Source: Lepidodermella squamata (lineage: Eukaryota > Animalia > Gastrotricha). Taken from it: a stretch of DNA of 64,000 bases. Both the position numbers and the translations under genes were made by a program. Location of the stretch: NCBI GenBank assembly GCA_047495785.1, contig JBLDXI010000003.1, forward strand, positions 3,534,001 to 3,598,000, given 5' to 3'. Below, piece after piece: positions 1,699 through 44,392 of this stretch (its first letter is position 1; the number at the start of each line of letters is the position of its first letter). The notes under the pieces were generated by a model. It had not been told where the DNA came from. It saw only the letters and a list, made by a program, of their open reading frames with translations, and searched no databases.

Positions 1699-4032
1699 AT
1701 GCGTTTTTCTCGTGCGCTCTTAATTGCTGTATTCCTAATTAGCCATGGTATAGGAACTTGCCTAAATTCGAATTAATTTAATTTACTCTATAATTTCAGC
1801 TATGGCTGATGGTGGTGAAAACGGCGATGAACTATGCTACGACGAGACACAGGCTGATCCTCAGCAAAGCATCAACTCAATTCCAAGTTCCAATGATGAT
1901 GACTCAAGCTCTGAAATCTGCATCGATGAAAGCCAATCTGCCTCAGCCTCGGCCGAGTTCGATCATGCTGAGTACGAATCGATCGAAGCTTCGTCACGGC
2001 AACGACGGCCAGTCACCCTTTTAAAAAGCTCGTGGAAAATCAGCGAAGAAAGCGATGACAGCTCTTTAAATAGTGAACTGACCAGCAATGAGGAAGGTGC
2101 CGAAAATGATGCGGGATTCGATTCCAGCTTTGATGCTTCATCTCGAAGTTCCGGTGAGCAATCTGGGACAGGCAAACGCTCGTCATCGGGATCTGATTCA
2201 GCTTCGTTCAGTAGGTATTTTTTAAATATATTTTCGCTATGATTCTATTTCTTATTTTTAAGGTGGATTAAGGTCTGGTAATGGCAAGTGGAGCTATCAG
2301 AAAGCTGGCTACACTATAACGTCCTTTAGGAAAGCTTCATCGCCGCGTAGGTTGCCTGTTATATTATTTGGGGCAAATAATATTTATCTGCATTTTTTTA
2401 TTAGAAAATAGGAGAGACCCTGAGATATCGAATGGACGGCGCCAATCCGAAGCTTCTTCCAGCATCGCCAAACGCCACACTAAAGCCAGCGCGTCTAGCT
2501 CTGAATCTAGCGCCGACCTTCGGGGATCCCACAAGAAGACGGAAAATATGGCCCAGGAGGCCCACTCTGCCGACTACGCCTCCCGCGACTCGAAGCGCAA
2601 CAAGGCCCACCACCGCCGAGACCAATCCTATAGTGAGTCGAGGCGAGATGAATCTCATAGCAAGTTCGGCAAAGTCCCGAAGAGACCTCCTCATGCTACG
2701 AAATCACGAAAGAATTTATGGCCAGTGAAGCCCCGGAAAACCTCTAGTAAGATGGAATTCGGCAAAACTTCCTACTCGGCGTCCCACGGTTCTGGCGATA
2801 GTTCGATTTCCGGCTCTGAAAGGAAGGTGATTAATCACAAAGCCTCAAAGTCGGGTTCCAGATCAACCTTTACCCGTAAGTTTAATAACGATAATTCCCG
2901 CTAATTTCGAAAGTAATTTATCATTAAAGGCAGAGCGCCAGTAAAACCTGACACAATTCGCCGTCGGGAAAATTCAGTTGGTCCCGCAACACGGCCGGTG
3001 AGGTACGATAAGCGTGAAACTAACCGGAATATCGGGCGTCAACGTCGCAGGAACCTCGACGACGGCCAAGCTGAGAGCCGCCGCAAGGGCAGTGTCGCGA
3101 TCGATTACAAGAAGAAGAAGGCCATCCTCAATAGGCCGGGCTATCGAAAAGTAAGCTCAGAATCTGAAGGAAGTTCCGTTTCCTACTCGTCGGCGCAAAG
3201 GCAACGTAAATACGAGAAACGCGTCGCAGATCGTCCAGGATACCGAAATCACCATATCAAGGCTCCTGGGGCGAAAAAAGCCAGAAAGGTCAGCAAGTCG
3301 AGCCATGGATCTACTGCTAGCAAGTCCGAACCCGCCCAACGCGAAAAGGCCCCGAAAGCCCGACCTGTCGACTACTCCTCCCGTCCCCGCGTCTACAGCA
3401 AGAAGTCTGCCTCCGACTACAACAAGTCCTCGTTCGAGCCCGCTCGCCCACGAAAATCGGTAGTAATTGTGAAATACCGAACTATCAATGGAAAGCCGTC
3501 CGAATCCGACTCTGAGTCCGCCCAGAAGGCCGTGAAGCCAATCAACTGGAGAAAAGCCGAAGACTCGGACAAGAGCTACTCGAAAATCACCCGTCCTTCC
3601 TCGCGAGGCCGCAGCATGAAAGCTATCAATTCTGAAAGCGGCATTTCATCGGAATCCAGATCGGCGTCAATCGTTCAAGATCGGTTGAAGCGAGATGAGA
3701 AGCCTCATCGGCGCTATCCAGGTTCAAAGACAGCGGGCAAGGCTTCCCGTTTCCAACCGGCGAAAAGAGGTCGAGTAGTTGAAAGTCAGCCTACATCTCG
3801 CAGCGAAGAATCTGCCAGCTTTAATTCGGAGGGCGAGAGCAGCGAATCAGGAGATGTAGGGAGATTGAATCACAGGAAGGAAAACAAGGCCGGGATGAAG
3901 AAAAAACACGGCCACTGCGATTTGAGCAAGGAGGCAAAGCCTGGTCACAACTACGGTTTCTACGCTGGATATGATCATTCGGGGTATTTTGGTCGCGAAA
4001 ACTTCAACCCGTTTGCTGATTATAAACATTGA
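1699..4032 (+). CDS. Secreted Ser/Arg/Lys-rich low-complexity protein with acidic N-terminal block (basic-protein family member 1), 5 exons
   Basis: Exons 1699-1747, 1800-2210, 2263-2346, 2405-2875, 2930-4032 join in frame through GT-AG introns of 52-58 nt. Signal peptide MRFSRALLIAVFLISHAMA. D/E/S-rich N-terminus, R/K/S-rich remainder, Tyr-rich tail. Contains AHSADYASRDSKRNKAH, shared with the genes at 18431-19786 and 39328-40529. Confidence 0.8.
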
Positions 4033-4633
4033 AACCTGACAATGACTTCATAGATAATAGTATAGAATAGAATTCAAGAGTGATTGATATTTTTTCGTGT
4101 TCTCAAAGGGAGAGCTTCGTTTATTCGTAGTTTGTTTTGCCGTAATTTATTCCTGCCATTGAATGCCGAGTAAAAATTAAAATAAAATTACCGCAACGGC
4201 TATTAAATGTTGACGATTTTGTCTGAGAAGGATGCAAAAGTTTCCGCGATATTCATATAGTCTAGAAGATCAGCTTTCCAGCGGTACCAACATAAGTGCT
4301 TCAAAATATATCAAATTAAATTAGTAGGAAACGTCATTTTGGGAACCTCTTTCAGCCAACCCAAATTCCGAGAGTTAGGTATGAAGTTTTTACCCCAATC
4401 CAATAGAGCCTAGGACAGTGTGCGGGTAAACAAAATGACTTGTTGCTGGCTTAGAATTCGATAAAGGTGAGCTTAAGGTTTAGGTTACGTACCGTAAATT
4501 GGGGCAAAATGGCCGCGGGAAAAAAATTACCCCCTGATTTTTTCGCATTTTTACACGTTTCAGAGGGTCCTGATTCCGATTTTATAGGAAGCTCATTTTG
4601 CCCCAGGTTTGGGGCAAATTGGACAGGTGTTTT

Positions 4634-5135
4634 GGGGCTAATTGGCCACCCTTATCCTTATAATGGGTTTTTAATATTTAGTGATTGTGAGGGTTGAATG
4701 GTCGAGTGGTTGTGATGCGTCCATCAGAACTTGAGTGATCTGATGAGCGACGGTTCGAATCCTCATAAAGTGGCATTTTTTTGCTCCGCATTTAATTTTT
4801 TTAATTTTTTTGTTTTAACTGTCCATTTTAATAATTTTTAATTAGTTTCTCCGTTTTTTCTGAGAGTTTTATTGCTGAGCAACTTTTAAACGTCTCCCGA
4901 ACAAAAAAACTGTCTGGCATACGTGGTGTTAGTGGAATAATTAAAATCGAAAATTAACAACAAAATTAAAAAAATTAAATGCGGAGCAAAAAATGCCACT
5001 ATATGAGGATTCGAACCGTCGCTCATCAGATCACTCAAGTTCTGATGGACGCATCACAACCACTCGACCATTCAACCCTCACAACCACTAAATATTAAAA
5101 GCCCATTATAAGGATAAGGGTGGCCAATTAGCCCC
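4634..5135. repeat. Long near-perfect inverted repeat (~180-bp arms, ~140-bp spacer); each arm carries a tRNA-derived (SINE-head-like) Pol III A/B box
   Basis: Arm 4634-4814 is the reverse complement of 4956-5135 with only a few mismatches. A box TGGTCGAGTGG 4699-4709, B box GGTTCGAATCC 4752-4762, T7 run 4776-4782; mirrored boxes at 5060-5070 and 5007-5017. Confidence 0.85.
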
Positions 5136-5548
5136 CATCATTGAGTTTTCCATGGGGTAATTTGGCCACAATCACCTAGCCATACCTGTGCATCGCCTGG
5201 GGTCGCGGTTTTTTTTGCTGTCATCTTCGACGAAAATGGCCGAAGGAAAAAAATTCATCTGAACATCAAACCTCGTGATTGGCTCCAGGTAATTCAATTT
5301 AGAGGGGTCATTTTTACCTCCCTAAACTCACCTCTGTGCAACAACATGCTGTGACCTCATTTCGGGACATACCTGGCTGAAAATTTGCAGGCTTGTAGGA
5401 GGCTTGTTGATAATTGTCCCCGTAAATTTTTATAAAGTTTTACCTTGTAGTTTTTGAGCTATCGATAAAATGGTGAAAACCTCAATTTTTGGCCAATTAG
5501 CCCCAAAAGTTCATTTTGCCCCAAATGACGGTATCTAAATTATTAGCG

Positions 5549-7676
5549 GAAATTAAGGAATTCTTCCCGGTGTTGAGGGCAGAACCGAGAATTCTGCCCG
5601 CTGAAAATGCCCGAGGGCGTAGCGGAGCGCAGCGAAGCGAAGCCCGAGGGTATTTTCAAGGGCTGAATTCGAGGTTTTGCCCGAGACACAAGGGAAGAGT
5701 TCCTGTTCCTTCCCAGTTGGTTATTTTCGTTAATCCGACACTCGGACGAGTGAAAATGGGGAATGGTGTATAGTGCGTATGAAAGATGACCGTTGTTAAT
5801 AACGAAAATAAGAAATCCAGCTTAAAATTTGTAGCAAATTTTTTTTTTGAATTTTTTTGTTCGTTGTTCATTTCCTTGTTTTATTATCAATTGAATATTG
5901 CGAATTTCCGTCGAATTTTCAATGGAGATCACTTTTGATATTGGCGACCTGGGCCTCGGTGCTCTCGCTGACGGCTCCGTGGAAGTGAAACAGCGCGAAG
6001 AATCCGATCCAATTCGACTTCTCGAACGAGAACTTGATGCTGATATCGAAGAAGAAGAATCCGATGAAGAGGGTGATACGTCGGAGTTCATTCAAGAAGT
6101 CGAAAATTTCGTGGCTGGTTTTGAAGCAAACGGCACAGCTCAGAAAACCAAGCAGCACTGGAGCCGATTTGTCGCATTTGTCGAGCAGCGATTCCACATT
6201 TCGGAGCAACTATTAGTTGAACTTACGGTCAAGGATATGGATCTCTATGTCGCTCTTTTTCTCAAGCAGTTGACGAAGACTGATGGTAGCGCGATGGAGC
6301 CGACAACGATTCGAGGCATTTATTCCTCCATCATTCGCCATCTCCGCGATGTGACGAAGAACGAAATCAACTTCACCATGGCGAGAGTCGATTTCTTCTA
6401 TAGCATGAAAATGCTGAAATCCAAGTTTGTCGAATCTAAGCGTGCTGGAAAGGGAAATAAAGCCCGAGCATCTGAATGCCTAGAACGAGAAGATATTGAT
6501 AAAATGCGTGAGGCGAAAACGCTGACTGATGACACGCCAATCGGTTTGATCACGATGCTGTGGCTGGTTTTCACCGTGTATTTCGGTCTTCGTGGCCGTG
6601 ATGAACATCTACAAATGAAGTAGGTTGTTGGATTGCCATTGAAAAATTGTTAAATTGGCCGTTTTCAGGTTTGGTGATGTCCAGCTAAAAACCGAATCTG
6701 GAGGTCGCAGGTATCTCGAATTCAACGAGCGACAGACTAAAACCAGGAATGGCGAATCAACCCACTCAAAACTGGCACCACGAGCATACGAGAACGGTGG
6801 CTTTTTCTGCCCGGTTCGATTGTTCCTTATTTTTTGTGCAAAACGACCGGGAAAGTTTTCGCGCCCGAGTGACCCAATGTATGTTGGTTGCCTGACCCGA
6901 TTTCGACCCGACGGCCTCTTCTACAAATGCCAAAATTTGGGCAAGAACCCCCTTGGATCGCTCCTCAAGGACGCCGCTGTCGGTGCTGGTATTACCAAAC
7001 GAATCACGAACCACCCGGCTCGAAAGTTTCTCGTCTCAACCCTCTCTGAACTCGGTGTCGATTCTCGAAAGATCATCCAGATTACTGGTCATGCATCGGT
7101 CGATTCTCTGAACAGTTACCACAAACTCAACACCTCTGAACGACGAAGTATCAGCGACAAACTGGCTGTCGGTTTCGGTGATGGACAATCAGCTGCAGTT
7201 TCGGGTGTGTCTGCACAAGAGATCAAGCCAACCGAAGGATTGGTGGTGGCCGAGTCGCATTTCTCGCAAACGCTGCTGCTTCGAAACGTCGAAAATGACC
7301 CGCGCGATGAGCCACCCGTAAAGCAAGCTAAACCCATGCCGATCTTCAATTTCTCGAATTGCTCCGTCGTTATTAACAATTAATCCGGCCCAAACACTTG
7401 TTTTAAAGTTTAAACATTCTAATAAAGGTTATTCACTTGTTCACTCGTTTGGTCAGAGTCTGAAGGTTGTAGTAAAGGGACTGGGAACGGAAATTGAAGT
7501 TGTGCAACATTATTTCAGGTGAGAGGTTTTCCCGAATTTTTGAGAGCATCAATTGATTTTCGAAAATAAAAAATCCACCCTAATCGTTTGAGCGGGCAGA
7601 AACAGCGGGCAGAAACATCGGGCAGAATCACTTTTTCCGTCTAGGCAAAAAATAACCAACTGGGCAGGAAGAAATT
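5549..7676 (+). mobile_element. Crypton-type tyrosine-recombinase DNA transposon, apparently full length
   Basis: Encodes the YR below. Bounded by a 6-bp direct repeat GAAATT (5549-5554, 7671-7676). Subterminal inverted motifs CCCAGTTGGTTATTTT (5712-5727) / AAAATAACCAACTGGG (7649-7664), and TTCTGCCCGCT (5592-5602) vs repeated (A)GCGGGCAGAA (7590-7628). GC-rich GCCCGAGGG..GCGAAGCCCGAGGG tract at the left end. Confidence 0.7.
5922..7383 (+). CDS. Crypton tyrosine recombinase (DUF3504-type YR related to ZMYM/KCTD1 C-terminal domain), 2 exons
   Basis: Exons 5922-6619 and 6669-7383 (49-nt intron GTAGGT..TTTCAG) join in frame. Catalytic signature intact: FGLRGRDEH (R), ERQTKTRNG (K), TNHPARK (HxxR), ITGHAS (H), LNSYHK (Y); also CPVRLF and LGKNPLG typical of DUF3504. 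Confidence 0.85.
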
Positions 7677-8018: not shown

Positions 8019-9193
8019 TTACCACCTAGCCGATGCCAAGAGGAGCAAGTAACCGTGAAGACAGGCGAACGCAACAGCAACTAGAGTAGCTACAAATGCA
8101 TCACAAGCCCTTATGGCGCTAAGAATAGAATTCATCCGTCGATTCGACCGCTTCCTTTCAACGGCATTAGCGTAACAACAAGCAATCAATTGGTAGACGG
8201 TGCAACTCGAGCAAATCCAAGCCGATGAAGAGAGGAGATCGTTCAACAAAAAATGCTGCGAAGTTCTCGCAACATTGCCGACAGCCGCTGATTGCGCTAC
8301 GCCCATTGCTAGAAGAACTGCCATGGAAAAAGCCGGCCTGTCTGGCATGTGAGCCGGCATGGAAAATGACGCGATTTCAACCAGCATCAAAATCGCATTT
8401 GGGACTACAAAATTCGACGTGTAATACGCCGGGTTCCTCCTGGCTGAAATCACGAAGAAAGCAGTGCTGGTATTGGACCCTCTGTAGGACATACTCGATA
8501 GGGTCGAGCCATGGCCGACATACTGCCAGCGATCTGAGGCCAGGCCGTTCCACAGGAAAACCGGGTCTTTGAACTTGACCATAGCCAGGCCTCGATTCAT
8601 CGAAAATGTGAACATGCAAGTTTGCTCGTCGAACGGGAATTTGGCTAGATCGAGTTCGCAGGATGCTGTCCAAATGCCGTCTTTAATCCAGTAGAAATCG
8701 ATAGTTCGATTAGGGGATGACGATGACTTTGACATAACTGCGATCAAATCGTCCCCGAATTCGTTGTTGAACTGCATGTAGGCGTTGCCGTGGGAGCTTC
8801 CGACAAATCGATACGCCGGGGTCCAAACTTCCTGGGCTGAGGCGACGTACAACTGCTCGGGTGGTCGCTTCGTTAGCAGATCTATTGAATCAGCCGGGCA
8901 AGTATTGACTGTCCAGGAAAGCAGAAGTGACCCAGTTAGGGTTACGACCTCCTGTACAGTGTCTATATCATCGAGCTTCTCGATTCCGAAAGCTGGTCTG
9001 ATGTTGAAGACTTCACCACGCGGGGTTAAGGGAGCTGCTCGAGTCGGTAGAAAACTCGAGCATTCCAGCATCAATTGTTTTGCTGTTATATTTGCCATTG
9101 GTAGATCACCAGTGACGGCGAAGATGTCTTTCAACAACATTTGGTATGTTGAGTTCTGACTGCGAGCGACCAATTCTAAAACAGTTGATTCAT
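8019..9193 (-). CDS. Cys-loop (pentameric) ligand-gated ion channel module, single intronless exon
   Basis: Cys-loop CELDLAKFPFDEQTC, VWTP motif, ARRNPAYY pre-M1, four hydrophobic helices (M2 DRPAFSMAVLLAMGV), short M3-M4 loop. No signal peptide of its own. Confidence 0.9.
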
Positions 9194-13779: not shown

Positions 13780-14440
13780 TTCTGTTTTTTTGGACTACAA
13801 ATAACGAGGTAATTTTTAATTTAGGTTCCTCTGAAATAATAAGAGAATAGAGATTGTTGGGGAAAAAAACCGAATTTTAGATATTTCGTGGATACGTCTT
13901 TTGATCTATTCTTGTTTCGGATCTATCCACTAATAAAAGTCGTCTGATTGAGAGATTTTATCTATTTATTAATTTAGAAGCCATTCATCCATTATAGTTA
14001 TGTTGGAAGGCTCGGCTGAAAAAAGGCAATTGGCTATATAGTTTGATCAAACTGTATAAATATTTTTTCCAAACCCAACATACAAAATAATTCAGCTTCC
14101 GAAAAACAAAATGCTAAATACCTAAAAAGACAATTATTTTATGTGATCTGCGTGTTCCGGTTTCCGGTTACAAGTTGGCCTTAATCTATACATTTTCAGG
14201 CGATAATTGTTCCGCGTCGCTATGAACGCGTGCTCCGGCGGCGCTCTCATTCATCGTGAGCGTAGAGCAAAGTTGCTACAACACGCGCGGCAAAACGAGG
14301 CCGAGCGCGCGCTGATCGAACGAAGACTGCTGATGTAACACCCGAAAGCTAGGTCAAACCATAAAAAAAACCTGTAGAGGCATTCGGAAATATTACCATT
14401 TTAATCATTTTAATATTTTTTTTTCAAATCTGAATTTAAC

Positions 14441-15661
14441 ATGCGACTTATTCTTGTAGTAGCGGTTTTAGCCCTGTTTTGCGTCGGTAATAACAATAAC
14501 CAGCATTTTTAACAAATTTTATACTTATTTTCATGAATAATAGCTTTAATTTCTGCCGATGCCTCACCCACAGTGAATAATAATGCTGCCGAAGCTACGC
14601 CAGCAGTGAATAACAATGCCGCTGAAGCGCCCGCTGGTTTAGCCGACAATCGCGGTTTGAACGGCGCCAACTTCGCCGGCAAACGGAACCGACGATGCCG
14701 TCCTAAATTCCACCGGAACAGTCGCAGCTACGTCAGTGCCTCTAAGAAATCAGCCTCAGCGGGTAAAAGGTTCGGACGCCGCCACGGTCAACGTCGCGGT
14801 GGAAATTACGCCGCTGCCTCGGTGAACAAGCGATCTGCTTCCGCCTCGGCTGGCAATGGCCGCCGTGGCGGTCGCTTCATCGGACGCAAGGGTCGTCGCA
14901 GTGGCAACTTCGCCTCGGTTTCTGTTAGCAAGCGATCTGCCTCAGCTGCTGCCGGCAACTTCCGTGGCCGTCGCGGCAACTTTGGTCGCCGTCATGGTGG
15001 TCGTCGCAGCGGCAACTTCGCCTCGGCTTCGGTTAATAAGCACTCCGCCTCCGCCTCAGCTGGCAGCAACAAGGGCATCAATAAGTTCGGCCGAGGCTCA
15101 TTATCCGGCCGTCGCCACGCTGGTCGTCGCCGTGGAGGAAGCTTCGCCTCTGCCTCGGTCAACAAGCGCTCTGCCTCGGCTGCTGCCGGCAACTTCCGCG
15201 GCCGCCGTGGTCGTGGCAACTTCTCCGGCCGTCGTCACGGTGGTCGTCGTGGTGGCAGCTTCGCCTCAGCCTCTGTCAGCAAGCGCTCCGCCTCGGCTGC
15301 CGCTGGCAAGTTTCGCGGTCATCGTGGTCGCATCTACGACCAAAAGGGTCGTCGCAGCGGCAACTTCGCCTCGGCTTCGGTTAGCAAGCGCTCGGCTTCA
15401 GCTGCTGCCGGTAACTTCCGCGGCAATTATGGTCGCCGTCGTGGCCACTCCGGCTCGGCTGGCTCCTACGGCAGGCGCGGCTATGGGCGAGGGTACGGCC
15501 GTCGTCGTGGCGCCTCGGCTTCAGTCAGCAAATACTCGGCTTCTGCTAATGCTGGAAGCTACAACCGTGGTGGCTACAGGGGACCTGGGCGCCGTAGCCG
15601 CTCTTTTTCCGGCCACGATTCTCGCGGCTATCGCGGTGGTTCTTATGACCCATATTACTAA
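14441..15661 (+). CDS. Secreted Arg/Gly/Ala/Ser block-repeat protein A (FASASVxKRSASAAAG + GR-rich spacers)
   Basis: Exons 14441-14486 and 14544-15661 (phase-1 intron). Signal MRLILVVAVLALFCVALISA. About 8 repeats of the ASASV(N/S)K(R/H/Y)SASA block. Ends GGSYDPYY. AATAAA near 15695. Confidence 0.85.
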
Positions 15662-18430: not shown

Positions 18431-19786
18431 TTAGTAGGTGTAGGTGCTATCTTCGTGAGCAGCTTCCTTACCATAGCCGTGTTTGTTGCCACCCTTCTTT
18501 TCGGTCTTCTTGCCGCCCTTCTTGCCATGGTAGCCGTTGCTGCTGGCGCTCTTCTTTCCGTAGCCGTAGGAGCCCGAGGACTTCTTGCCCTTCTTGCCGC
18601 CCTTCTTCGCAGCCTTCTTGCCATGGTAGCCGCTGTCCTTCTTGGCGCTGGCGCTCTTCTTTCCGTAGCTGTGCGAGACTGAGGACTTCTTGGCCTTCTT
18701 GGCAGCCTTCTTCGGGGCCTTCTTGGGGGCCTTCTTGGGGGCGCTAGCGCTCTTCTCCTGGTAGCTGGCAGAGACACCTGCATGGAAGTCGTGGGTGGCA
18801 CGTTCAGCCGAGGCATTGGCGCGCTTCTTGGACTTCTTAGCCGAGGCCTTGCGAGTGTGGGCAGAGTCGGAGACGGAGGTCTTCTTGCTGGCGGCCTTGT
18901 AGTCGCGAGCCTTATGAGCCTTACGGGTGGCGGAGGCCGAGGCGTGGCGTTGATGGGCCTTGTTGCGCTTCGCCTTCTTCGAGGCAGCGGCGGCCGAGGC
19001 CTTCGAGTCGCGGGAAGCGTAGGCAGCAGAGTGGGCCTTGCGGGACTTCTTGCCGTGGGCCTTCTTGGCGGTCTTTTTGCGGGTAGCAGTGGTAGCGGCA
19101 CCATCAGAGTCGGCCTTGGCGAACTCTTGCGAGCCGGACTCGAAGCTGAACTTGTTGACCTTGTTGTGGCCCTTGTCGGTGAAGGTCTTCTTCTTGAACT
19201 CGATCACCTCGCCGGCCTTGTCGCGGGCCTGGTCCTTCTGGAAAGCAGCCTTGCGCTTGTGGTCGGCGCGGCCGTGCTTCTTGTTGCGCTTGTGCTTCTG
19301 GGCAGCGGCGGCGGCGCCAGAGTCGGCGTAGGCGTTGTCGTGCTTGGCGAAGGCAGCCGAGTCGCTCTTGCGGACAACACGGCCGTGGCGCTTGCTGGCG
19401 GCCTTGGACTTCTTGCGGTCGTAGGCGGAGTCGCGCTTGCCAGCCGAGGCGTAGCTGGCCGAGGCACGTTCGCGGCTGGCCGATCGGGTCTTGATCAGCT
19501 TGCGCTTGTCGCTGGTCTTCTTGTTGTGCGAAGCATCGGCCGAGGCGTAGTCGACGGCAGCGTCTTCCTGTTCAGCAGAGGCGGACTTGCGGTCGTAGGT
19601 GTCGCGTTGGTCGACCGAGGCGGAGAAGGAGGCCTTCTTGCTGCCACCCTTCTTGGCGCCTTTGCCTTTACCACCGGCAGAGACTGAATAAATGGCGAAA
19701 AATTAAATAAATAATTGAAGATGGGATTGTAGATTACCGGTAGCGGCAAGCAGGATAATCACAGCGAGAGCGAGGTAGACACGCAT
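18431..19786 (-). CDS. Secreted Lys/Ala/Ser/His-rich basic protein C (~433 aa)
   Basis: Exons 19786-19738 and 19683-18431 (phase-1 intron). Signal MRVYLALAVIILLAATVSA. Strong AAG/GCC codon bias. Ends EDSTYTY. Paralog of 39328-40529. Confidence 0.85.
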
Positions 19787-19984
19787 ATTTTATAATTACT
19801 GATTCTAATTTGAAAAAAGGAAATTAGATCACAACTGTGACATTATTAGACTTTAATCATCTCACGGGGCATGCTCAAGCAAAAAAATGATATCTGTGCA
19901 ATATTGCAACAGTTTCTAAAAAGCCCTTTTCTTATACGAAAATAAAGTGGATTCGCGGCGAAAACGTTATTGAGTATCTTTCGC

Positions 19985-21198
19985 TTATTCCAAGCCGAAT
20001 TTCAAGAGAGGGCGGTTGTTGTTGCCAGCCTCGGCGGAGGCCGAATTCTTGTTGACCGAAGCCTCGGCGAATTCGCCACCGCGGCGACCACCATGGCGAC
20101 GACCGAAGAACTTGCCATGATGACCACGGCGACCGCGCTTGCCATTGGAGCCAGCCGAGGCGGAGGCAGAGTTCTTGTTAACCGAAGCCGAGGCGAAATT
20201 GCCACGACGACCCTTGTGGCCGAAGAAGCGGCCACCACGGCGGCCATTGCCGGCTGAAGCAGAGGCAGATCGCTTGTTATCTGAGGCAGAGGCGAAGTTA
20301 CCGCGACGACCACGTCCGAAGTGACCGCGACGGCCACGGAAGTTTCCGGCAGAAGCAGAAGCAGAGCGCTTGTTAACCGAAGCAGAGGCGAAGTTGCCGC
20401 CGCGACGACCACCATGACGGCGTCCGAAGTGGCCACGACGGCCGCGGAAGTGGCCAGCGGCAGCCGAAGCAGAGCGCTTGTTGACCGAGGCTGAGGCGAA
20501 GCTTCCACGACGACCACCGTGACGACGACCGAAGAACTTGCCATGATGACCACGGTGTCCACGGAAGTTGCCGGCGGCAGCCGAGGCGGAGCGCTTGTTG
20601 ACCGAGGCAGAGGCGAAGTTTCCTCCACGGCGGCGACCATGACCAAAGTAGCGACCAGCGTGATGGCGACGGCCGAAGCCCTTGTGGCCCCTGCGACCCT
20701 TGTTGGAGCCAGCCGAGGCGGAGGCGGAGTTCTTGTTGACAGAAGCCGAGGCGAAGTTGCCACCACGACGACCCTTGTGACCGAAGAAGCGACCACCACG
20801 ACGGCCATTGCCAGCCGAGGCAGAGGCGGAGTTCTTGTTAACTGAGGCAGAAGCGAAGTTGCCGCGACGGCGACGACCGAAGAATCCGCGCTTGCCGTTG
20901 GAGCCAGCCGAGGCGGAGGCGGAGTTCTTGTTGACTGAGGCAGAGGCGTGGTTTCCAGCACGGCGGCGGCCGTGGAAGCCAAAACCGCGACCGTGCTTGC
21001 CAGAGTACAGATTGCCGTGGTGAGCCTTGTCGACACCAGCCGAAGCGGAGGCGCTCTTCTTGTTCACAGAGGCGGACGCATCATTGGCGGAAACGGCAAC
21101 TTTAGGCAACGAAAATCAATATTGAAACCAGTCATAACAACATGTCGCTTACCGATGCAGAACAGGGCGACAGCAACTGCGACGAGTGTCAAACGCAT
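19985..21198 (-). CDS. Secreted Arg/Gly/Ala/Ser block-repeat protein B (paralog of 14441-15661)
   Basis: Signal exon MRLTLVAVAVALFCI (21198-21153), phase-1 intron, then VAVSA-NDASASVNKK...; about 11 NFASASVNK(R/N)SASA(S/A)AG blocks separated by G/R/H/F spacers. Confidence 0.85.
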
Positions 21199-21667
21199 CT
21201 TAAATTCGGAATAAAATATGATGATAAAAAGGCGAAGCTAGCTGGAATGATATTTTCCCGATTTCGAAATCGCCTTTTAAAGGCTGGTTCGACCGGTTTT
21301 CACCTGCCTGTTGCGTAGCAGAGCCATCGGTCGCGTGTTCAACCTAACTATCCGCCACCATGTGCAACAATATCGCGAGCGAAAATTTGATTTGTTTTTC
21401 AAAAATTCGCTCGTTCACGCGTTCACGCTGTTGTTTTGTTGTTATTGCTTCATTTTTTGTCCGCCTTTTATTCGCCACGCTCGCCGAACCACAAAAACTC
21501 ATTTACGAAGACAGATTATTTTAAAATTTATAATACTTAATTTTCAACCTCAAAAACCAGATTAGAATGTCCGCCTATTATTTATATATTATCATCACCC
21601 TGGCAGATTCAGTTAAAAAATTTTCGATAAAAAACACGTGAACAAAAGTTTATTTACGACGATTGCA

Positions 21668-35500: not shown

Positions 35501-35679
35501 ACTGAAACTTGCGTGAGTGGTATCGATTGTTCGATTCTATCGATCGGCCGTATATCGGGTGGAAAAATTGGCCATAATCCGCAGCCGATAGGATGCAGCA
35601 CCAACTTGCCTTCACTTTCTTTGGCAAATGTGAACGAGGCTAATACGAAGAAAATTATTCTCCACGCGTTTGTTTTCAT
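32513..35679 (-). CDS. VWA5A-like VIT-VWA protein with signal peptide (paralog 1), multi-exon
   Basis: MKTNAWRIIFFVLASFTFA. VIT domain (IECEFVFPISESAAVFKLDAEIDGR, VGNLPANG..IRIGY). VWA with MIDAS DRSGSM..GGTEV..LTDGEV. VWA5A/PARP4-type C-terminus (LHRLSAKRVL; LVLLQKLDGSWEL..EWLLIERKA). Confidence 0.85.
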
Positions 35680-36052
35680 TTTGGGAGAAAAAAATTAGAA
35701 ATGAGATGATAACGAAAATCAAAGCTGAATCGTGACGGAAAAACAAGTCCGAATTTGTTTAACATGGTGCATGTAATATTGTAATATTGAAAATAAAATA
35801 TGGCGTAAATTTTGCAATCTGTGAACTGTTTTTACCGATTGGACCTCAAAGGCAGTGGAAAACCGAAAATAATAGAATGAGATAGCACTGCGGAGAGGAT
35901 TATAATTAACCTGCTTTGTGCGTGAAATGTGGGGGAAATTAGCGATTCCAACTTGGCAGTTGCTCTAATTAGGGGTTTCCAGCTTTCGTGATATATGGGT
36001 CAATCTTGGCCCGTGGCTTTGGACTGTAAAAAGGCTCTGAAAATATCTATAT

Positions 36053-37382
36053 GGGTGATTCCACCGTTACGGACAGAGGTTTCGTGTCAGTTTGAAATTT
36101 TCGAAATAATTTCTTGTTAAAACTGTAAGCATTCATCACTTGGATTTTTTACCAAGCTTTACCAATGACTTCCTGGTCATTTAAAAAAAACGTTTGTACC
36201 AGTTTGATCATTTTTAATTGGACAGTGACCTAATATATGAGCCCGTTACGGACAGAGGTGCTTTGTACACCGAAAACGTACCCCTTTTTTGAGAAAGAAT
36301 CTGTAATCAAATTGTTGTGGGATTCAGCATTATTTCATTCCAAAGCATTGTTAATATGATCAAAAAGAAAAAACACGAGTTATTTTGTACTCGACAAACA
36401 TGGTTATGGCTATAGCTGAGTTGAAGTCCGTTACGGACAGAGATTGCCATTTCGTTACGGACAGAGGTATTTGACAGTGTCAAATTCGTCTATAAAAAAA
36501 GTTCTGATCATTATTCTGATTGAAGATTCCGAATCTACGGGTCTGATTACCCTAGGTATGATCAATAAACGTTATCGCGGGGTCATTGGGAACTCAGGGG
36601 TGAGGTGCTAACACACCTACCCAAAAACAGGTGTTTTGCACCCAATTGCAAGGGAAACAGCCAAGAATCAACATGTAAATTAATTTTTTTTATAATACCG
36701 TTAAATAATCCAGCAAAACTCATTGGTTATCAATTACGTTAACTAAATCGACCAAGGCGAGTTCAATTCTTCAATCAGATTTTTATTATCTGTCACCGCC
36801 TTCAACCCATCCCATTTTTATAAATTTGTCTTTTTTTCGTAAAAGGCGCGATTCTCTGTCCGTAACGGGTGGGTGGGACTCTAACTACGTGGGCTGGTGA
36901 AGCTCAAGAGGTCTCATTTGAAGCGTCTAAGCGGCTAGGAATAAGGAAAATTCACTATTCACCATTTAGCGCAGTTGTCTTGTCAAAAAAATTGAAAATG
37001 TGAGAAAACGTTACAGACAGAGATATTTTGACAGGTTGGTCAAATATTACGCAACGAACAATTTTAAAAAGCATGACACCGGATGTCACATTGATTTTTG
37101 AAGCCTTGTGCCCCATGTTAGTCAAAAAACAACTCGCCGGTTAGGGCAGTATGTATGTATTTCAACTAAACCGCTCTGAAAAATGTTTAAAATAGCATTG
37201 ATTTTTGATAAAAATATTGGGTTACGCAATCGTGTCAAAATGTCAAAAAATTGTCCAGAATTCCATAGAAAATCACGAAATCACACAGCCTGGGTCAAGA
37301 GCTATCTGACGATATGCAATACATGGTCTGAATGTGAAATTTATAAATCGATGAAAAGTGATGTTTTCTCGTGGAATCACCC
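36053..37382. mobile_element. Non-autonomous DNA transposon (1.33 kb) with GGGTGATTCCAC TIRs and ATAT target duplication
   Basis: GGGTGATTCCAC 36053-36064 / GTGGAATCACCC 37371-37382, flanked by ATAT on both sides. Internal CGTTACGGACAGAG motif at ~36066, 36244, 36429, 36453, 37009 (1 mismatch) and inverted at ~36854. No transposase ORF. Confidence 0.8.
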
Positions 37383-37784: not shown

Positions 37785-38490
37785 TTATTCGCTTGCTTCA
37801 TGCTTCTTTTTGGCGCTTCGTTGCTTCTTCTTTTTCTTCCCGTCCTGGTTCGACGAAGCCCGCTTGTCCCTTTTACCCGACTTCTTCGATTTCGGGCTCT
37901 TTTTCTCCTTCTTCTTCTTCTTGTCGGCCTTCTTTTCAGATGACGGATGCTTCTTAGTTCGCAACCGTTTACGAGTAACCGTCACCTCCGAATAGGACTT
38001 ATCATCTTTCATCGCCTCGGAAAAGCCAGACACCTCAACTTCAGCTCGTTCGTAGGCTTTAACTCGCTTGTTCTTCCTGCCCTTGCCGTCTTCCTTCTTC
38101 TTGCCAATCGAGTTATCTTCCCATTCGTATTCGAAATTCAACTCCTCGCTGTAGGACTGCTTCTCGGCATACCCGCCGGCACGGTGGCGTTTCGTAGACT
38201 TTTTCCGATTTTTATCACCCGCTTCTGGTTTGTGTTGCTTTCGAAGCGTCTTCTCAATCGCTTTGTTACTCTTTTTTGTCGCGTCGAACAACGAGCCAAG
38301 ATCGAAAAAGTCACCGCCTTCGGATTTTTTCGGCGACAAATTCGAACCGTCAGAATCTGAATCGAATCCGAATGAATATACCTCGGCTGGAAAAATGGAA
38401 AAAAAATTAATTAAATTTCAGGAATTATACAAACAATGCAATACCCAGCAAAAATGCGGCAATCACCGCTAAAACCGAAATCGCCCTCAT
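37785..38490 (-). CDS. Secreted Lys-rich basic protein F (~215 aa)
   Basis: Exons 38490-38445 and 38386-37785 (phase-1 intron). Signal MRAISVLAVIAAFLLAEVYS. Acidic FGFDSDSDG start, then K/S/E-rich body. Confidence 0.75.
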
Positions 38491-39327
38491 TTCAACCAAA
38501 ATTGAACACCTGAATAAAATTCCTAGTAGTAAAACAATTAAAATGTTTTTTACGATTCGATGATGAATGGGGTGAACCGGTCGCGTGCCAGCTTTTTCGC
38601 ACGTGCTAAGTTCGAATTATGAATCAATGAAAGATAACAGCCTTATTTTCCTGGAACTGGACACTAATCTGTGTCTATTTTCCCCAAATATTCCATATTT
38701 GCCGCGGCATCAAATACGATTCATCCTTAGAATTAATTAATTTTTTATGGGAAATATTCTTGGTTGTAATTTCTGAGATTTGTATCATTTATAGAGTCAA
38801 ATGACAGTGAAGTTTGCGGCCTTTGAAACCGTGTGAAATTTGATGGAGTAGTCGATTGCAATCAGTTAGCTTTCGAACTTCGAAATGCTTGCGCCGATAA
38901 TGAAACTCCTTGGCTGATAACTTCGAAAAATTGGAAGGATATATCCATCATCTCAGAACTAATTGGAATACCAAGCGCGCTTAACTCATTAATTTGCGGC
39001 AGCGAAAACAAGAATTATCAGAATTTCTGCGTCTGACGGTTAGCAATGTCAAGCTTGCATGCCCTATTCCGCGACCTTTTATTCCCAAAACAGCATTTCG
39101 ATAGCTCAACTTTTCTCTCTTTCTCTCCTATTATTTTTGGACTAATAAACGGAATGTCTCTCTCCTACTAGGTGACAAAAAAGACAAGGATTAAATCAAT
39201 AGGTATATTTATTGCACCAAATCTCAAAAACATAACAAGCATCACGGCATGGTTCAACAATACCAAATACATATCACTGCATCAGTTTGTCGAGCTCTCG
39301 AGCCCAAATGATGACAGAATTTCAAGC

Positions 39328-40529
39328 TTAGTGGTTGTAGCCACCTTTCTTACCACCCTTCTTTTCGGCCTTCTTTTCGGTCTTCTTGCCGGTCTTCTTG
39401 GCAGCCTTCTCGCCCTTCTTTGGGCTGGCGTTCTTTTCTTGGTAGCTGCCAGAAGCCGAAGCCCTGAAGTTGTGGGTGGCGCGTTCAGCAGAGGCATTAG
39501 CGCGTTTTCGGCCGTGCTTGGCCGAGGCCTTACGGGTGTGGGCAGAGTCAGAGACGGCGGTCTTCTTGTTGCCGGCCTTGTACTTGCGAGCGTTGCGCGA
39601 GTCCCGGGCGGCGGAGGCCGAGGCTCGGCGTTTGTGGGCCTTGTTGCGATTCGCCTTCTTCGAGGCAGCGGCAGCCGAGGCAACAGACTCGCGAGTAGCG
39701 TAGTCAGCAGAGTGGGCCTTGCGGTTCTTCTTGCCCTTGGACTTCTTGGCGGTCTTCTTGCGGCTGGTAGTAGCGGCATCTCCGAAATCGAAATCGAAAG
39801 CAAAGTCATCGAAAGCAGCTCCTTCACTCGCCTTGTTGACCTTGTTGTGGCCCTTGTCGGTGAAGGTCTTCTTCTTGAACTCGATCACTTCGCCGGCCTT
39901 GTCGCGGGCCTGGTCCTTGGCGAGCGCAGCCTTGCGCTTGTGGTCGGCGCGGCCATGCTTCTTGTTGCGCTTGTGCTTCTCGGCAGCGGCAGCAGCGCCA
40001 GAGTCGGCGTAGGCGTTGTCGTGCTTCGCGGAGGCAGCGGAGTCGCTTTCACGGCGTTTGCGGCCGTGGCGCTTGCTGCCGGCCTTGGACTTCTTGCGGT
40101 CGTAGGCAGAGTCGCGCTTGCCAGCCGAGGCGTAGGTGGCCGAGGCGCGTTCGCGGCTGGCCGATCGGGTCTTGATCAGCTTGCGCTTGTCGCTGGTCTT
40201 CTTGTTGTGGGAAGCATCAGCCGAGGCGTAGTGGGCGGCGGCGGAATCTTGTTCAGCAGAGGCGGATTTGCGGTCGTAGGTGTCGCGGTGGGCGACCGAG
40301 GCGGCGAAAAAGGCCTTGCGACCGCCTTTCTTGTTGCCACCCTTCTTCACACCCTTGTCGTAGCCACCCTCATGACCACCTTTTTTCACGCCTTTGCCTT
40401 TATTACCGTAATCACCGCCAGCCGAGACTAAAATACAGATGACTTGGATACAAAAATTGAAAAATTCATGAAACTTATACCAGCAGCTGCGAAGATAACA
40501 ATAACGGCCAAAGCAAGGTAGATTCGCAT
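39328..40529 (-). CDS. Secreted Lys/Ala/Ser/Arg-rich basic protein D (paralog of 18431-19786)
   Basis: Exons 40529-40481 and 40427-39328. Signal MRIYLALAVIVIFAAAVSA. Core nearly identical to protein C (KKTSDKRKLIKTRSASRERASA...KAGEVIEFKKKTFTDKGHNKVNK). Ends GGYNH. Confidence 0.85.
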
Positions 40530-40694
40530 GGTTCTTAAAATCAGTAACAAACTATATAAAAAAAGAGCGAAATCAGCTGTGAACACAGGTATGAGCCTTT
40601 ATTGATGAAATAGTTGTAATTGAAAAATGAAATTAATGGATATATTTTGACGCTTGGTGGGCCGTTTAAATAAGCAGCGCTTAATGGCTGGCCG

Positions 40695-40707
40695 ACGTGT
40701 TGCGCAA
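40695..40707 (-). promoter_or_regulatory. Candidate bZIP-type promoter element TTGCGCAACACGT upstream of gene D
   Basis: About 23 nt upstream of a TATTTAAA TATA-like box. A near-identical 13-mer sits in the equivalent position of gene E. Confidence 0.45.
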
Positions 40708-41582
40708 CCATGTCGGTGTCGAACGAACAAATGCATATTTTCCGATACTCTGCGGACGCGTGCGAGCTCCGCTGTCCGCGGAAAATATTTTCATCAGTAC
40801 GGGAGAGGCCGCTTTTTTCAAAATAGATTCATTGATTAAAAAAGTTGAACAATCATGTTCAAATCAACCATCAACGTGTTAATCACTCGAGCTCGAGAAA
40901 AAAAAAAAATATCATTTCATTTTTCGGTATATGGCTTCGCTCGCTGCGTCAGGGAAATTTTCGGGCAGTAACTACATAAGCAACCTTGGCTTCAACGAAG
41001 CTATTAATATCGGTATTAAAGGTCCAGTTTTCACATTTCAGCAGTCATTTCTGGATTTTTGTAGCAAATGATACCTAAGAAATTGTTTCCGCAGTTGATC
41101 GCGATCATCGCTTGCCGTTTTTCCTTAACAACGATTCAAGGACCCAGCATCCAGGAAAAATAATAATAAAATAAACATTCATTATTTAATATCATCTGCC
41201 CATTTCTTATCCTTTCTGCAATCGATAATGAATAAGCAATCATGAATCATGAAAAATCGGTTGTCGTCGGCTCTGGCGGTGCCTTGAATACGAAAAAATT
41301 CAGCAAGACGAGTATTTTATTAGAAAAATTATTCCCTCGGTTCGGCTTGAGGTGCATCTTCAGAGACAGTTTGATGACAAAAATTATATGATTCCTGAGG
41401 AAAATTCGGCTAAGCAGGATATTTTAATTTAAATTGGAATAATTTAATTAGACGATGTCCCAAATAAAAGTCCCTCAATTTTGTTCTGCTTTTTGTTACC
41501 TTTTCATCAAGACCATCAACACTATCAATGGTGCCGTAAAATTGTATCTATGAAATAAATAGATACACCTTCGTTAGATGGC

Positions 41583-41826: not shown

Positions 41827-42292
41827 CGGATGTTTTAGCAGAAATTTATTTAGAAAATTACACCGCAAGTAAGATTTCACCGCAGTAACCGTAGGATTTA
41901 TTATTAGAAAAAATTCCGATTTGAAATTGCAAAGCTTAAATTAGTAGATTGTTGATTCTGCTTTCTTCAATTTTCAGGCGGCGTAATTCGATTTAATTGT
42001 GTCCGAAATTAGATCAAAAAATATTCAAATGATGAAAACTCAAAATGTTTGTGGAAATTAAGATGTATCGATCCAAATATAGACAATTTCATGTCTAATA
42101 TGAATAATAGTATGGTCAAGCACAAACAAACAAGCTCGTGCTATTAATAATCTAGCACGTTCCGCCTTTTGGAATTCGACCTTGAATAATGAATAAATGC
42201 CACGTGATATTGAAAATTTTAGGAGACACGCGACCCGTTCCGCACCGACGCCCGAGTAGCGCCTTAGCGCGCCCGGCTACGCAAAACCACAG

Positions 42293-42305
42293 TTGCGTAA
42301 CACGT
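42293..42305 (+). promoter_or_regulatory. Candidate bZIP-type promoter element TTGCGTAACACGT upstream of gene E
   Basis: About 17 nt upstream of a TTTAAAA TATA-like box (42322). 12/13 identical to the element upstream of gene D. Confidence 0.45.
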
Positions 42306-42474
42306 TCAGCCACACGCGCCCTTTAAAACAAGTCGAACCCCGTCTCACGGTTCATTGACGAGAATTCAATCATTCACTTTCATTACAAGCATTTCAGCTT
42401 TGAAATTGAGGTGTTTTAAAAGAAATTTTTAATTTATTTTTCAATTTTCGTCCTAGATTTTTTTTATACTCAAA

Positions 42475-44392
42475 ATGAGGATCGCCCTCACTATCGCCGT
42501 AGCGGCATTTTCTTTAGGTAATTTCTGAACAATTATTGACCTGTTTTAAACGAATTATTTTTTCAGTCGCCGTTTACGCCAATGGAGCTGAAAAGCAAGA
42601 CGCGATTAACGCGAAGGCCATCACCAACCTCGCCAATCTGCCTGGTGCTTCCGGGGCGGCTGCTGCTGCTTCTGGCAAGGATGGATTGAGCCAATTCACG
42701 AGCGGAGGCGGCGCTGCCGGCGCTGCTATCACTGGCGGTACTGGATCGCTGACGGATTTGGGCAAGAACCAGGCGAACACGCAGGCGGCTGGTGGAATCA
42801 GCCAGAACAACCAGTTTACGGCCGGCCTCAGCCAGTTCGGCAGTCCTGACGCCGCCAAGGAAGGTATCACCAGCAAGATTGTACCCGCCAGTGCCAAGAA
42901 GCCGGCTGATAGCGAACCGGAGAGCAAGAGCGAGGAGTCAGCCGCCAGTGAAAAGTCCGAGGCGAGCGAGAAGTCGTCGGCAAGTGAGAAGTCGTCGCCT
43001 GAATCAGCGCCGCAACCCAAGAAGAAGACCGCTGCGGTGCGCAAACCCGAGCCGAGGAAACCTGCGCCGAAGGATACCGAAGAAGAAAGCGAATCGCCGT
43101 CGTCCGAAGAAGAGAAGCCGCGTGCGGCGAAGAAGGAGGTCAGGAAGCAGCGCAAACCCAAGCAAGTCAAGCCAGCTAGGAAGGCGAAGAAGGAAACTTC
43201 GGAAGATAACGACTGGAAGCAGTTCTTGAACAGCGGCGACAGCGATTTCGATATCAAGAAATACAAGGCGGGTAAGAAGGCCCAACGCGCGAAGAAGGTT
43301 GAGAGCAAGTCCAAGTCCAAGTCGTCCAAGTCCAAGTCGGAGAGCAAGTCGTCGCCTGAATCAGCCTCGAAATCGTCGCCAGAGGAGCCCAAGCGCAAGC
43401 CCAAGGCCAAGGGCAAGGTGATCCGCCTCAAGTCAGCCGGTCCCAAGGTGCAATCAGTCTCCTACAGCGCCAAGAGCAAGGAGTCGGCGAAGATCAAGGA
43501 GAACAAGAAGAAGTTCGCTGCTAAGAAGGTTTCCATTTCTGAGAAGACCCGCCACAGCAAGAGCAGCTCCGAGCACACCAAGGCGGATGCGAAGAAGAAG
43601 TCTGCCAAGGAGAAGCTCGACATCGCCGTCAGCGCCACTGTTGAAGACAAGAAGTCGAAGAAGGACGCGAAGAAGTCGTGGAAGAAGAAGGCGAGCAGCC
43701 AGCGCAAGAAGTACGCCAAGCACTCGCGATCTGACAAAGCGTCCGCCGAAGCCAAGTCCAAGAGCGAAAAGGCCAGGATCCGCGCCCGTGGCAAGTTCAA
43801 CAAGCACGGCAAGAACAACCAGGAGAATGAGCTTGACGCTGGCACTGAAAACACGCGCAATACTGACAACATCCAGTTCTCCCGCAACACCGACAAGGGC
43901 CAGGACAAGACGTGGACCAAGAGCAAGGGCAAGACCAACAACGAGTTCGGCGAAGGTGCTGCCCTGAGCGGTTCGATCGAGGCGAAGGCGTCGAAGAAGA
44001 GCGCCAAGGCGAGCAAGAAGAGCAAGAGCAAGGGCACCAAGGCGCGCAAGTCGGCTGCCTCGGAGAAGGCCAGCTACTCGTCTGGCCAGCACGACAAGAA
44101 GCGGAAGCAGAAGGCCCGCCTCAGCGCTGACGTCAAGTACAGCAAGGGCAAGAAGTACGCCAGTGCCGACTACAAGAACAAGAAGAAGGCGAGCGAGAGC
44201 GCCTCGACCAAGAAGTCGAAGAAGGCCAGCAAGGCCAAGATCTCGGCCAAGTCCAAGTCCGTCTCGATCGAGTCGAAATCTGAAGTTTCGTACAGCAAGA
44301 GCGAGTCGCCGGCGCCCAAGCAGATCAAGAAGAAGGGCAAGGGCAAGGGCAAGAAAGGCAAAGGCAAGAAGGGCAAGAAGGTCTACAACTAG
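42475..44392 (+). CDS. Secreted Lys/Ser/Ala/Glu-rich basic protein E (~622 aa) with Gly/Ala N-terminal block
   Basis: Exons 42475-42517 and 42567-44392 (phase-1 intron), probable 5' UTR intron 42411-42456. Signal MRIALTIAVAAFSLVAVYA. GASGAAAAASG block, SxE-rich block, poly-K/S body, ends KKGKKVYN. Confidence 0.85.

What the first reader, a model, noticed from the sequence alone, without database searches (positions are those of the whole stretch)
1699..44392. Cluster of six secreted, polycationic, low-complexity proteins: candidate undescribed glue/fibre/casing biomaterial system
Seen: six genes (1699+, 14441+, 19786-, 21198-, 38490-, 40529-, 42475+ are seven loci when both paralog pairs are counted). 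Each has a short MR-starting signal-peptide exon closed by a phase-1 intron and a mature chain dominated by K/R/S/A/G/H with almost no Cys. Several share motifs across subfamilies (AHSA(D/A)YA(S/T)R(D/E)S..RNKAH in genes 1, C and D; ASAS strands throughout), and several have strong GC3/AAG codon bias typical of high expression. They are interleaved with LamG-EGF and secreted VWA genes. Established: cationic low-complexity proteins together with VWA/EGF/lectin proteins form invertebrate adhesives and cements (flatworm Lys/Arg-rich adhesive cohesion proteins, sabellariid tube cement). Inference: a gland-specific secretory programme for an extracellular material; these repeats match no family I recognise.
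Basis: partly seen in the sequence, partly recalled or inferred. Interest (0 to 1): 0.88.

Follow-up and report, generated by a model that had tools for sequence, protein, structure and literature searches.

The report
Co-regulated secreted polycationic orphan proteins
Seven neighbouring genes of a tiny freshwater animal (probably the gastrotrich Lepidodermella squamata) encode secreted, strongly positive, repeat-like proteins with no known relatives; six share one control motif, and they most likely build a body or egg covering whose make-up is undescribed, although the tissue is not shown.

Summary
The seven genes are real, in five sequence types (g1; g2/g4; g3/g6; g5; g7). Each has a signal-peptide exon closed by a 49-58-nt phase-1 intron. 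RNA contigs lie on g2, g3 and g4 exons, skip the predicted g4 intron, and miss the LamG gene between them. No relatives were found in any database. The motif CACGCGWYC lies 97-248 nt upstream of six genes (9 copies in the window, 1.3 expected). The seventh, g3, starts 43 nt behind g4's apparent poly(A) site and may be an operon partner. One of five AlphaFold models folds the g4 repeats into a curli-like two-sheet beta-solenoid (Z 17.5), a known AlphaFold2 bias. Five proteins end in tyrosine. Best reading: subunits of a bulk hardened covering (cuticle or egg shell); glue is the main rival. This scan already noted the same kind of genes and a shared motif in at least five nearby windows.

The parts
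1699..4032 (+). g1: 705-aa secreted polyampholyte (acidic Ser/Glu N-terminus, basic remainder); model exons 1699-1747, 1800-2210, 2263-2346, 2405-2875, 2930-4032
   Evidence: internal introns are the best of several open models, not RNA-checked
2558..2620 (+). patch of g1 homologous to g3/g6 (AHSADYA...RNKAH), GC3 0.88 against 0.52 for the whole gene; probably captured from a g3-type gene
14441..15661 (+). g2: 387 aa, exons 14441-14486 and 14544-15661; seven 18-residue Ser/Ala modules (14801-15556) with Gly/Arg spacers
   Evidence: RNA contigs on its 3' end
18431..19786 (-). g3: 433 aa Lys/Ala/Ser-rich, exons 19786-19738 and 19683-18431; member of a multicopy family
19799..19857 (-). g4-g3 junction: ATTAAA 19857-19852, RNA contig end 19829, T-rich tract, candidate acceptor AGs at 19805 and 19799; g3 ATG 43 nt after the contig end
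   Evidence: (table 8, record 29); operon reading is inference
19985..21198 (-). g4: 386 aa, exons 21198-21153 and 21099-19985; ten 18-residue modules (21088-20024) with Gly/Arg/His/Phe spacers
   Evidence: intron skip 21099-21153 seen in run X1
37785..38490 (-). g5: 215 aa, Lys-rich C-terminal half, exons 38490-38445 and 38386-37785; no relative in the window
   Evidence: expression untested
39328..40529 (-). g6: 382 aa, paralogue of g3 (78%), exons 40529-40481 and 40427-39328
   Evidence: expression of this copy untested
42475..44392 (+). g7: 622 aa, Gly/Ala N-terminus, Ser/Glu/Lys middle, Lys/Ser/Ala C-terminus; exons 42475-42517 and 42567-44392
   Evidence: expression untested
1530..1538 (-). 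CACGCGWYC motif upstream of g1
14224..14232 (-). CACGCGWYC motif upstream of g2 (a second CACGCG at 14282)
21329..21424 (.). two CACGCGWYC motifs upstream of g4 (21329-21337, 21416-21424); C/EBP-like site near 21310
38579..38587 (-). CACGCGWYC motif upstream of g5, overlapping an ACCGGT
40699..40762 (.). C/EBP-like palindrome (from 40699) and CACGCGWYC motif (40754-40762) upstream of g6
42227..42318 (.). CACGCGWYC motif (42227-42235), two C/EBP-like sites (42276, 42292) and a second CACGCG (42313) upstream of g7

Best explanation
The seven genes are one segment of a large lineage-specific battery of structural subunits that one secretory cell type exports in bulk to build a hardened extracellular covering: the scaled cuticle or the egg shell of a gastrotrich. 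Shown: gene structures, splicing of g4, RNA contigs on g2/g3/g4, purifying selection, shared upstream motif, many related copies in the genome. Inferred: a shared factor binding CACGCGWYC switches them on together. In g2/g4 each 18-residue module folds as strand-arc-strand with Ala/Val inside and Ser outside; modules stack into a curli-like beta-solenoid fibre bearing Gly/Arg/aromatic loops. The Lys-rich g3/g6, g5, g7 and g1 act as extended matrix. The positive charge condenses with a polyanion (sulphated glycan or phosphorylated Ser-rich chains such as the S-x-E-rich parts of g1 and g7). C-terminal tyrosines are oxidatively cross-linked.
For: Signal exons in 7 of 7; g4 intron skipped in RNA. 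6,938 contigs of run X1 lie on about 2.7 kb of exon and none on the adjacent LamG gene; in DNA run X8 summed depth is about 4,000-5,500 on g3 against 85-150 on single-copy flanks, with up to 25 contigs sharing one alternative base (not a true copy number). Motif in 6 of 7 promoters across five sequence types; 0 of 300 and 0 of 100 shuffles reach it. dN/dS 0.43 for the g3/g6 core and about 0.14 among modules; 21 of 28 listed variants synonymous. Module positions 4, 6, 8, 13, 15, 17 are Ala/Val in 101 of 102 cases; charged or bulky changes fall at positions 1-3, 5, 11 and 16. Best g4 model: ten stacked strand pairs, pTM 0.60; top match curli CsgA, Z 17.5, rmsd 7.3, 231 aligned, next 12.8. Tyr within the last four residues of 5 of 7 proteins, P about 1e-4, post hoc. 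Many small clustered paralogues are the pattern of cuticle and chorion gene batteries (own knowledge); flatworm glue proteins are 3,700-14,800 aa (PMC6410801, PMC9229212).
Against: No tissue, proteomic or functional data. Only 1 of 5 models is a solenoid (mean pLDDT 58.7; others 30-43), from a 2-sequence alignment, and AlphaFold2 over-predicts solenoids for repeats (PMC11795689). Foldseek found nothing. The g3 model is unreliable (pTM 0.20). Tyr content is only 0.5-4%. No polyanion partner or oxidase was identified. Grainyhead-like sites are only marginally enriched (P about 0.03). Contigs cannot rank expression. The species is inferred from circumstantial evidence.
Confidence: 0.5

Rival explanations
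1. They are cohesive components of the duo-gland glue or trail mucus, working like flatworm ap3: a polycation that holds the footprint together and is released by a polyanion.
For: Gastrotrichs are recovered as sister to flatworms and have adhesive tubes (PMC4563153). Tmed-ap3 is a secreted G/R/K/H/S low-complexity protein (PMC9229212). Barnacle cement proteins alternate Ser/Ala/Gly blocks with basic blocks (PMC5099703), as g2/g4 do.
Against: Length 215-705 aa against 3,700; G+R+K+H+S 49-61% against 88%. No vWD-C8-TIL partner in the window. Chaetonotids have only two adhesive tubes, a small outlet for tens of heavily transcribed genes. An unchecked scan note reports a giant polycationic protein elsewhere, a better ap3 candidate.
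Confidence: 0.22
2. They are secreted host-defence polycations, or precursors cut at dibasic sites into membrane-active peptides.
For: High positive charge; Arg/Gly/Phe/His spacers of 13-30 residues; 28-45 dibasic pairs per protein; multicopy and fast-changing.
Against: Basic pairs are everywhere and do not delimit repeated cassettes. The conserved part is the Ser/Ala module, not the cationic spacer. Selection is purifying rather than diversifying. No antimicrobial family hit.
Confidence: 0.1
3. They are granule-packing, storage or stress-protective proteins of oocytes, resting eggs or the X-organ; they condense polyanions in granules or protect the embryo and form no solid material.
For: Disordered, hydrophilic, very abundant. 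The g3 model is long Ala/Lys helices as in LEA-like proteins. An insect antifreeze solenoid appears among fold matches at Z 8.4.
Against: No LEA or other Pfam hit. The modules lack Thr ladders. Z 8.4 is near background. Terminal tyrosines are left unexplained.
Confidence: 0.1
4. They are nuclear protamine- or H1-like proteins and the signal exons are mis-modelled.
For: Lys/Arg/Ala/Ser composition.
Against: Seven concordant signal exons. g2, g3, g4, g6 and g7 have no Met after the first one. The g4 intron is skipped in RNA. Signal exons are under purifying selection (dN/dS 0.11 and 0.24, few codons).
Confidence: 0.02

Closest known systems
Flatworm adhesive cohesion proteins Mlig-ap1 (KR regions) and ap3 (GRK/GRKHS)
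   Same: Signal peptide, Cys-free polycationic low-complexity chain; probable sister phylum.
   Different: Ten times shorter, Ala-rich, multicopy; no vWD/C-type lectin/EGF core or partner; no sequence hit (the length-limited searches could not have seen proteins of that size).
[quoted passage not shown]
   Same: Small, basic, secreted; small-residue blocks alternate with Lys/Arg blocks; nanofibre-forming.
   Different: No sequence similarity found; g2/g4 use an exact 18-residue module; little Thr.
Bacterial curli subunit CsgA
   Same: Predicted two-sheet beta-solenoid of strand-arc-strand repeats; first strand reads N-x-A-x-A-x-V like N-x-hydrophobic-x-hydrophobic-x-Q.
   Different: No Gln ladder, no XGXX arc, 13-30-residue cationic loops, 4% identity, no curlin Pfam hit; convergence at most.
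Caddisfly H-fibroin
   Same: Alternating-serine blocks separated by Gly-rich spacers (PMC13267644 abstract); freshwater.
   Different: No (SX)nE ending (S-x-E count 0 in g2, 1 in g4); about 36 kDa, not giant.
Trematode vitelline (egg-shell) proteins; insect chorion and cuticle gene clusters
   Same: Small, Cys-free, secreted, Lys/His/Gly with Tyr available for tanning; clustered genes with a signal-peptide intron and shared promoter boxes (the insect part is from own knowledge).
   Different: Tyr 0.5-4% against 12-15% (PMC11727788); no egg-shell or chitin-binding domain hit.

Membership tests
Flatworm ap1/ap3 adhesive proteins | Signal peptide plus Lys/Arg-rich low-complexity chain | tested here: met
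Flatworm ap1/ap3 adhesive proteins | Giant size (3,700-5,400 aa) and about 88% G/R/K/H/S (ap3) | tested here: not met
   215-705 aa, 49-61% (PMC9229212, PMC6410801)
Flatworm ap1/ap3 adhesive proteins | C-type lectin-vWD-C8-TIL-EGF core in the protein or in a co-expressed partner | tested here: not met
   none in the seven; neighbours are VIT-VWA and LamG-EGF without the motif; rest of genome not searchable
Flatworm ap1/ap3 adhesive proteins | Expression in adhesive gland cells, loss of adhesion on knock-down | not testable with these tools
   needs in situ hybridisation and RNAi
Curli CsgA/CsgB | Curlin repeat with Asn and Gln ladders and XGXX arcs; Pfam curlin hit | tested here: not met
   no Gln in the modules, no Pfam hit at E up to 1; definition in PMC10192328
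Curli CsgA/CsgB | Two-sheet beta-solenoid of stacked beta-arches | tested here: inconclusive
   1 of 5 models, Z 17.5 to 8c50_A; AlphaFold2 bias (PMC11795689)
Curli CsgA/CsgB | Forms cross-beta amyloid fibres | not testable with these tools
   needs recombinant protein
Barnacle GSrCP cement proteins | Alternating small-residue and basic blocks | tested here: met
   g2/g4 modules and spacers (PMC5099703)
Barnacle GSrCP cement proteins | Sequence homology to the cp19k/cp43k domains | tested here: inconclusive
   no hit for g3, g3/g6 or g7; g4 was searched only in Pfam, the Atlas and metagenomes; low-complexity filters may hide weak matches
Caddisfly H-fibroin | (SX)nE blocks in a giant chain | tested here: not met
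   S-x-E count 0 and 1; 386-387 aa
Trematode vitelline proteins | 12-15% Tyr and egg-shell synthesis domain | tested here: not met
   PMC11727788
Sabellariid tube cement (Pc proteins) | Tyr/DOPA-rich polycations paired with a poly-phosphoserine polyanion (own knowledge) | tested here: inconclusive
   Tyr low; no pure polyanion gene in the window; modifications not testable
Protamine/H1-like nuclear proteins | No signal peptide; winged-helix domain in H1 types | tested here: not met

The most novel reading that the evidence does not exclude
Gastrotrichs build their chitin-free covering from an independently evolved, curli-like functional amyloid: secreted Ser/Ala beta-solenoid subunits with polycationic loops, set in a matrix of Lys-rich chains and locked through terminal tyrosines, all made from a battery of dozens of genes under one promoter motif and partly arranged in trans-spliced operons.
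Probability: 0.2. Interest if true: 0.85.

Novelty: new variant of a known kind. Interest (0 to 1): 0.58.

Why it matters
I found no molecular description of gastrotrich cuticle, egg shell or glue in the papers searched (open-access library only). These genes give named, abundant, co-regulated candidates, so the question becomes testable by in situ hybridisation and proteomics. The upstream motif offers a way to list the whole battery in the genome. If the g2/g4 module really stacks as a beta-solenoid, it is a short, soluble-looking, convergent counterpart of bacterial curli in an animal and a simple template for underwater materials. Cationic low-complexity secretions as such are well known, which limits the surprise.

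Tried and rejected
Homology searches, all blank: Pfam at E up to 1 on all exons; ESM Atlas features for g3 and g4; word-index protein search for g3 and for the g7 core (sees only 0.55-1.75 times the query length); HMMER over 1.84 billion representatives with the g3/g6 profile; metagenome contigs for g3/g6 and g4. As the operators required, searches were run exon by exon by reference; the joined spliced models were used only inside scripts for composition and pairwise comparison, and the joined database search was left out. Cdc25 did not name the organism (best hits about 50%). A single superfamily for all seven was rejected. A motif I saw by eye between g3/g6 and g7 (KHG...I[EQ]F...TDKG.[ND]K) was not significant (family-wise P about 0.09-0.11). 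A resemblance of g3 to insect DUF4779 hairpin proteins, recalled from memory, found no Pfam support. Grainyhead and E-box sites were marginal. The g3 fold was not searched because the model is unreliable. The shared phase-1 intron was not taken as evidence of common ancestry, since it is common in signal peptides (own knowledge). One paper look-up failed on a too-short term.
Full report
Gene structures. Each ATG opens MR plus a hydrophobic stretch, cut after 43-49 nt by a GT-AG intron of 49-58 nt in phase 1 that joins to a long open frame. The products are g1 705 aa (five exons in the best model), g2 387, g3 433, g4 386, g5 215, g6 382 and g7 622 aa. g2, g3, g4, g6 and g7 have no second Met, so their long exons cannot be translated without the signal exon. 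Mature chains have pI 10-12 and 0-3 Cys. g1 is the outlier, with an acidic first 100 residues and weak codon bias.

Relationships. With locally shuffled controls only g2/g4 (z 28) and g3/g6 (z 44, 78% identity) are whole-length paralogues. g1 carries a patch of about 60 nt that is 85-93% identical to g3 and g6 in DNA and has their high GC3, so it was probably captured from a g3-type gene. Other links among g1, g3/g6 and g7 are weak; g5 stands alone. The set is united by design and regulation more than by ancestry.

Expression and copy number. Four runs were laid on 15450-21400. X1 and X9 behave as RNA: their contigs lie on the end of g2, on g3 and on g4, and on none of the bins over the LamG-EGF gene between them. 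X1 skips 21100-21152 exactly, the predicted g4 intron. Pieces with 0-1 differences in the 3' ends of g3 and g4 show these copies are transcribed. X8 is DNA, covers the flanks at about 85-150, and rises to about 4,000-5,500 on g3 and 1,000-2,100 on g4, with many distinct variant contigs. The tool warns that this is no copy number, but it shows many related copies elsewhere. X2, from another organism label, holds a g3 relative (38 differences in 457 nt). Selection is purifying: dN/dS 0.43 for the g3/g6 core, about 0.14 among modules (pairs not independent), and 21 of 28 listed variants synonymous.

Organism. Cdc25 at 50100 has no hit above about 50% over its domain, so the proteome is not in the database. 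Scan notes suggested Lepidodermella squamata. I checked this only indirectly. The published assembly is 122 Mb in 157 contigs, 43% GC, 83x, from 2024, annotated with an older public transcriptome (PMC11660948). The window has 43.7% GC, the scan index lists 1,993 windows on 147 pieces, and the same label covers a 2024 DNA run and a 2014 RNA-like run. The different label of X1 is unexplained.

Co-regulation. A scan note mentioned shared promoter boxes in nearby clusters, so I tested it here. CACGCG was the top 6-mer in an unbiased count. It lies within 300 nt upstream of six of seven genes, against 3% of other non-coding windows; none of 300 shuffles reached this. The longer form CACGCGWYC occurs nine times in the window (1.3 expected): seven copies upstream of g1, g2, g4 (two), g5, g6 and g7, and two in the arms of one inverted-repeat element. 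It spans five sequence types, so it is not a by-product of duplication. A C/EBP-like site occurs at g4, g6 and g7. The binding factors are unknown. The LamG-EGF, VIT-VWA and BTB genes have no copy upstream.

The exception, g3. g4 and g3 are in tandem. An X9 contig runs through the g4 3' UTR to 19829, 22 nt past an ATTAAA, and then has 22 unaligned letters (not displayed; a poly(A) tail would fit). The g3 ATG is 43 nt further on, behind a T-rich tract and AGs 24 and 30 nt after that end. Unchecked scan notes report spliced-leader operons in this genome with a 28-nt spacing. g3 may therefore be transcribed from g4's promoter, which would account for all seven genes. The alternative, a compact promoter inside g4's 3' UTR, is open, and g6 keeps a similar upstream block without an upstream gene. 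I put the operon reading at about even odds.

Neighbours. The LamG-EGF genes have GC3 0.41-0.49, prefer AAA and end in hydrophobic anchor-like tails. The VWA genes are VIT+VWA_3 proteins; at least one starts with a signal-like N-terminus. Flatworm glue uses vWD-C8-TIL with C-type lectin and EGF (PMC6410801).

Structure. g2 and g4 hold 17 copies of an 18-residue module, consensus G-N-F-A-S-A-S-V-N-K-[RN]-S-A-S-A-[SA]-A-G, between spacers of 13-30 residues that are about 60% Gly+Arg. Alternate positions are Ala/Val in 101 of 102 cases. The best AlphaFold2 model of g4 stacks ten strand pairs with disordered loops (pTM 0.60, strands near pLDDT 75; the other four models are poor). Its best structural match is curli CsgA of Pontibacter (Z 17.5, rmsd 7.3, 231 aligned; next 12.8). 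Foldseek found nothing significant; one bacterial Atlas model gave TM 0.62. The module lacks the Gln ladder and XGXX arcs that define curlin (PMC10192328), so it is not a curlin. AlphaFold2 is known to fold repeats into unrealistic solenoids (PMC11795689). Here the implied core is small and uncharged, which is the plausible case, but it remains a prediction. The g3 model is uninformative. Five of seven proteins have Tyr in the last four residues (P about 1e-4, noticed post hoc), a possible cross-link site.

Relatives. None were found, within the limits of length windows and composition filters.

Verdict. The most likely role is structural subunits of a bulk covering, cuticle or egg shell (0.5), ahead of glue or mucus (0.22), defence (0.1) and storage or protection (0.1). 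It works like known block-copolymer secretions (barnacle cement, caddisfly silk, flatworm ap3) but passes no membership test. The scan has noted similar clusters from about 390 kb before to 20 kb after this window; those notes are unchecked and are not counted as support.

Noticed in passing
window 5898-7383 +: Two-exon tyrosine-recombinase gene (DUF3504 plus phage-integrase hits), Crypton-like transposon.
   Followed up: partly
window 4634-5135 and 53560-54338: Two long inverted-repeat elements (148-nt arms at 98%; nested arms at 81-93%), MITE-like. The second carries CACGCGACC in both arms, just upstream of a BTB gene.
   Followed up: partly
window 8019-13100 -: Multi-exon gene ending in a Cys-loop ligand-binding domain, preceded by a 253-nt Thr/Ser-rich tandem repeat (9534-10161).
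   Followed up: no
window 32500-35679 - and 45960-48867 -: Two VIT+VWA_3 genes (VWA5A type) with hydrophobic, signal-like N-termini; VWA5A-type proteins are usually described as intracellular (own knowledge).
   Followed up: partly
window 24001-30717 -: Single 2,238-codon exon of repeated LamG-like plus EGF units with a hydrophobic tail; shorter relatives at 15845-18040 and 21668-23790.
   Followed up: partly
window 17222-17845: DNA run X8 shows two versions about 8% apart in the LamG gene: high heterozygosity or a second copy.
   Followed up: no
window 18622-20546: DNA contigs of X8 join g4-like to g3-like sequence with other spacing (joints 19786-20151, 18622-20240), hinting at further g4-g3 tandems or chimeric genes elsewhere.
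   Followed up: no
window 54403-63688 +: Tandem cluster of four BTB-BACK genes.
   Followed up: no
window 50100-50990 +: Short Cdc25-like phosphatase gene, GC3 0.76, only about 50% identical to its best hits.
   Followed up: partly
window 36000-37030: Non-coding stretch with several dispersed copies of a 12-14-nt motif containing CGTTACGGACAGAG; probably a transposon remnant.
   Followed up: no
window 40530-40620 and 19787-19860: g6 keeps an upstream block (AATAAA, CACAG, T-tract, AG) like the g4-g3 junction although no gene lies upstream of it.
   Followed up: partly
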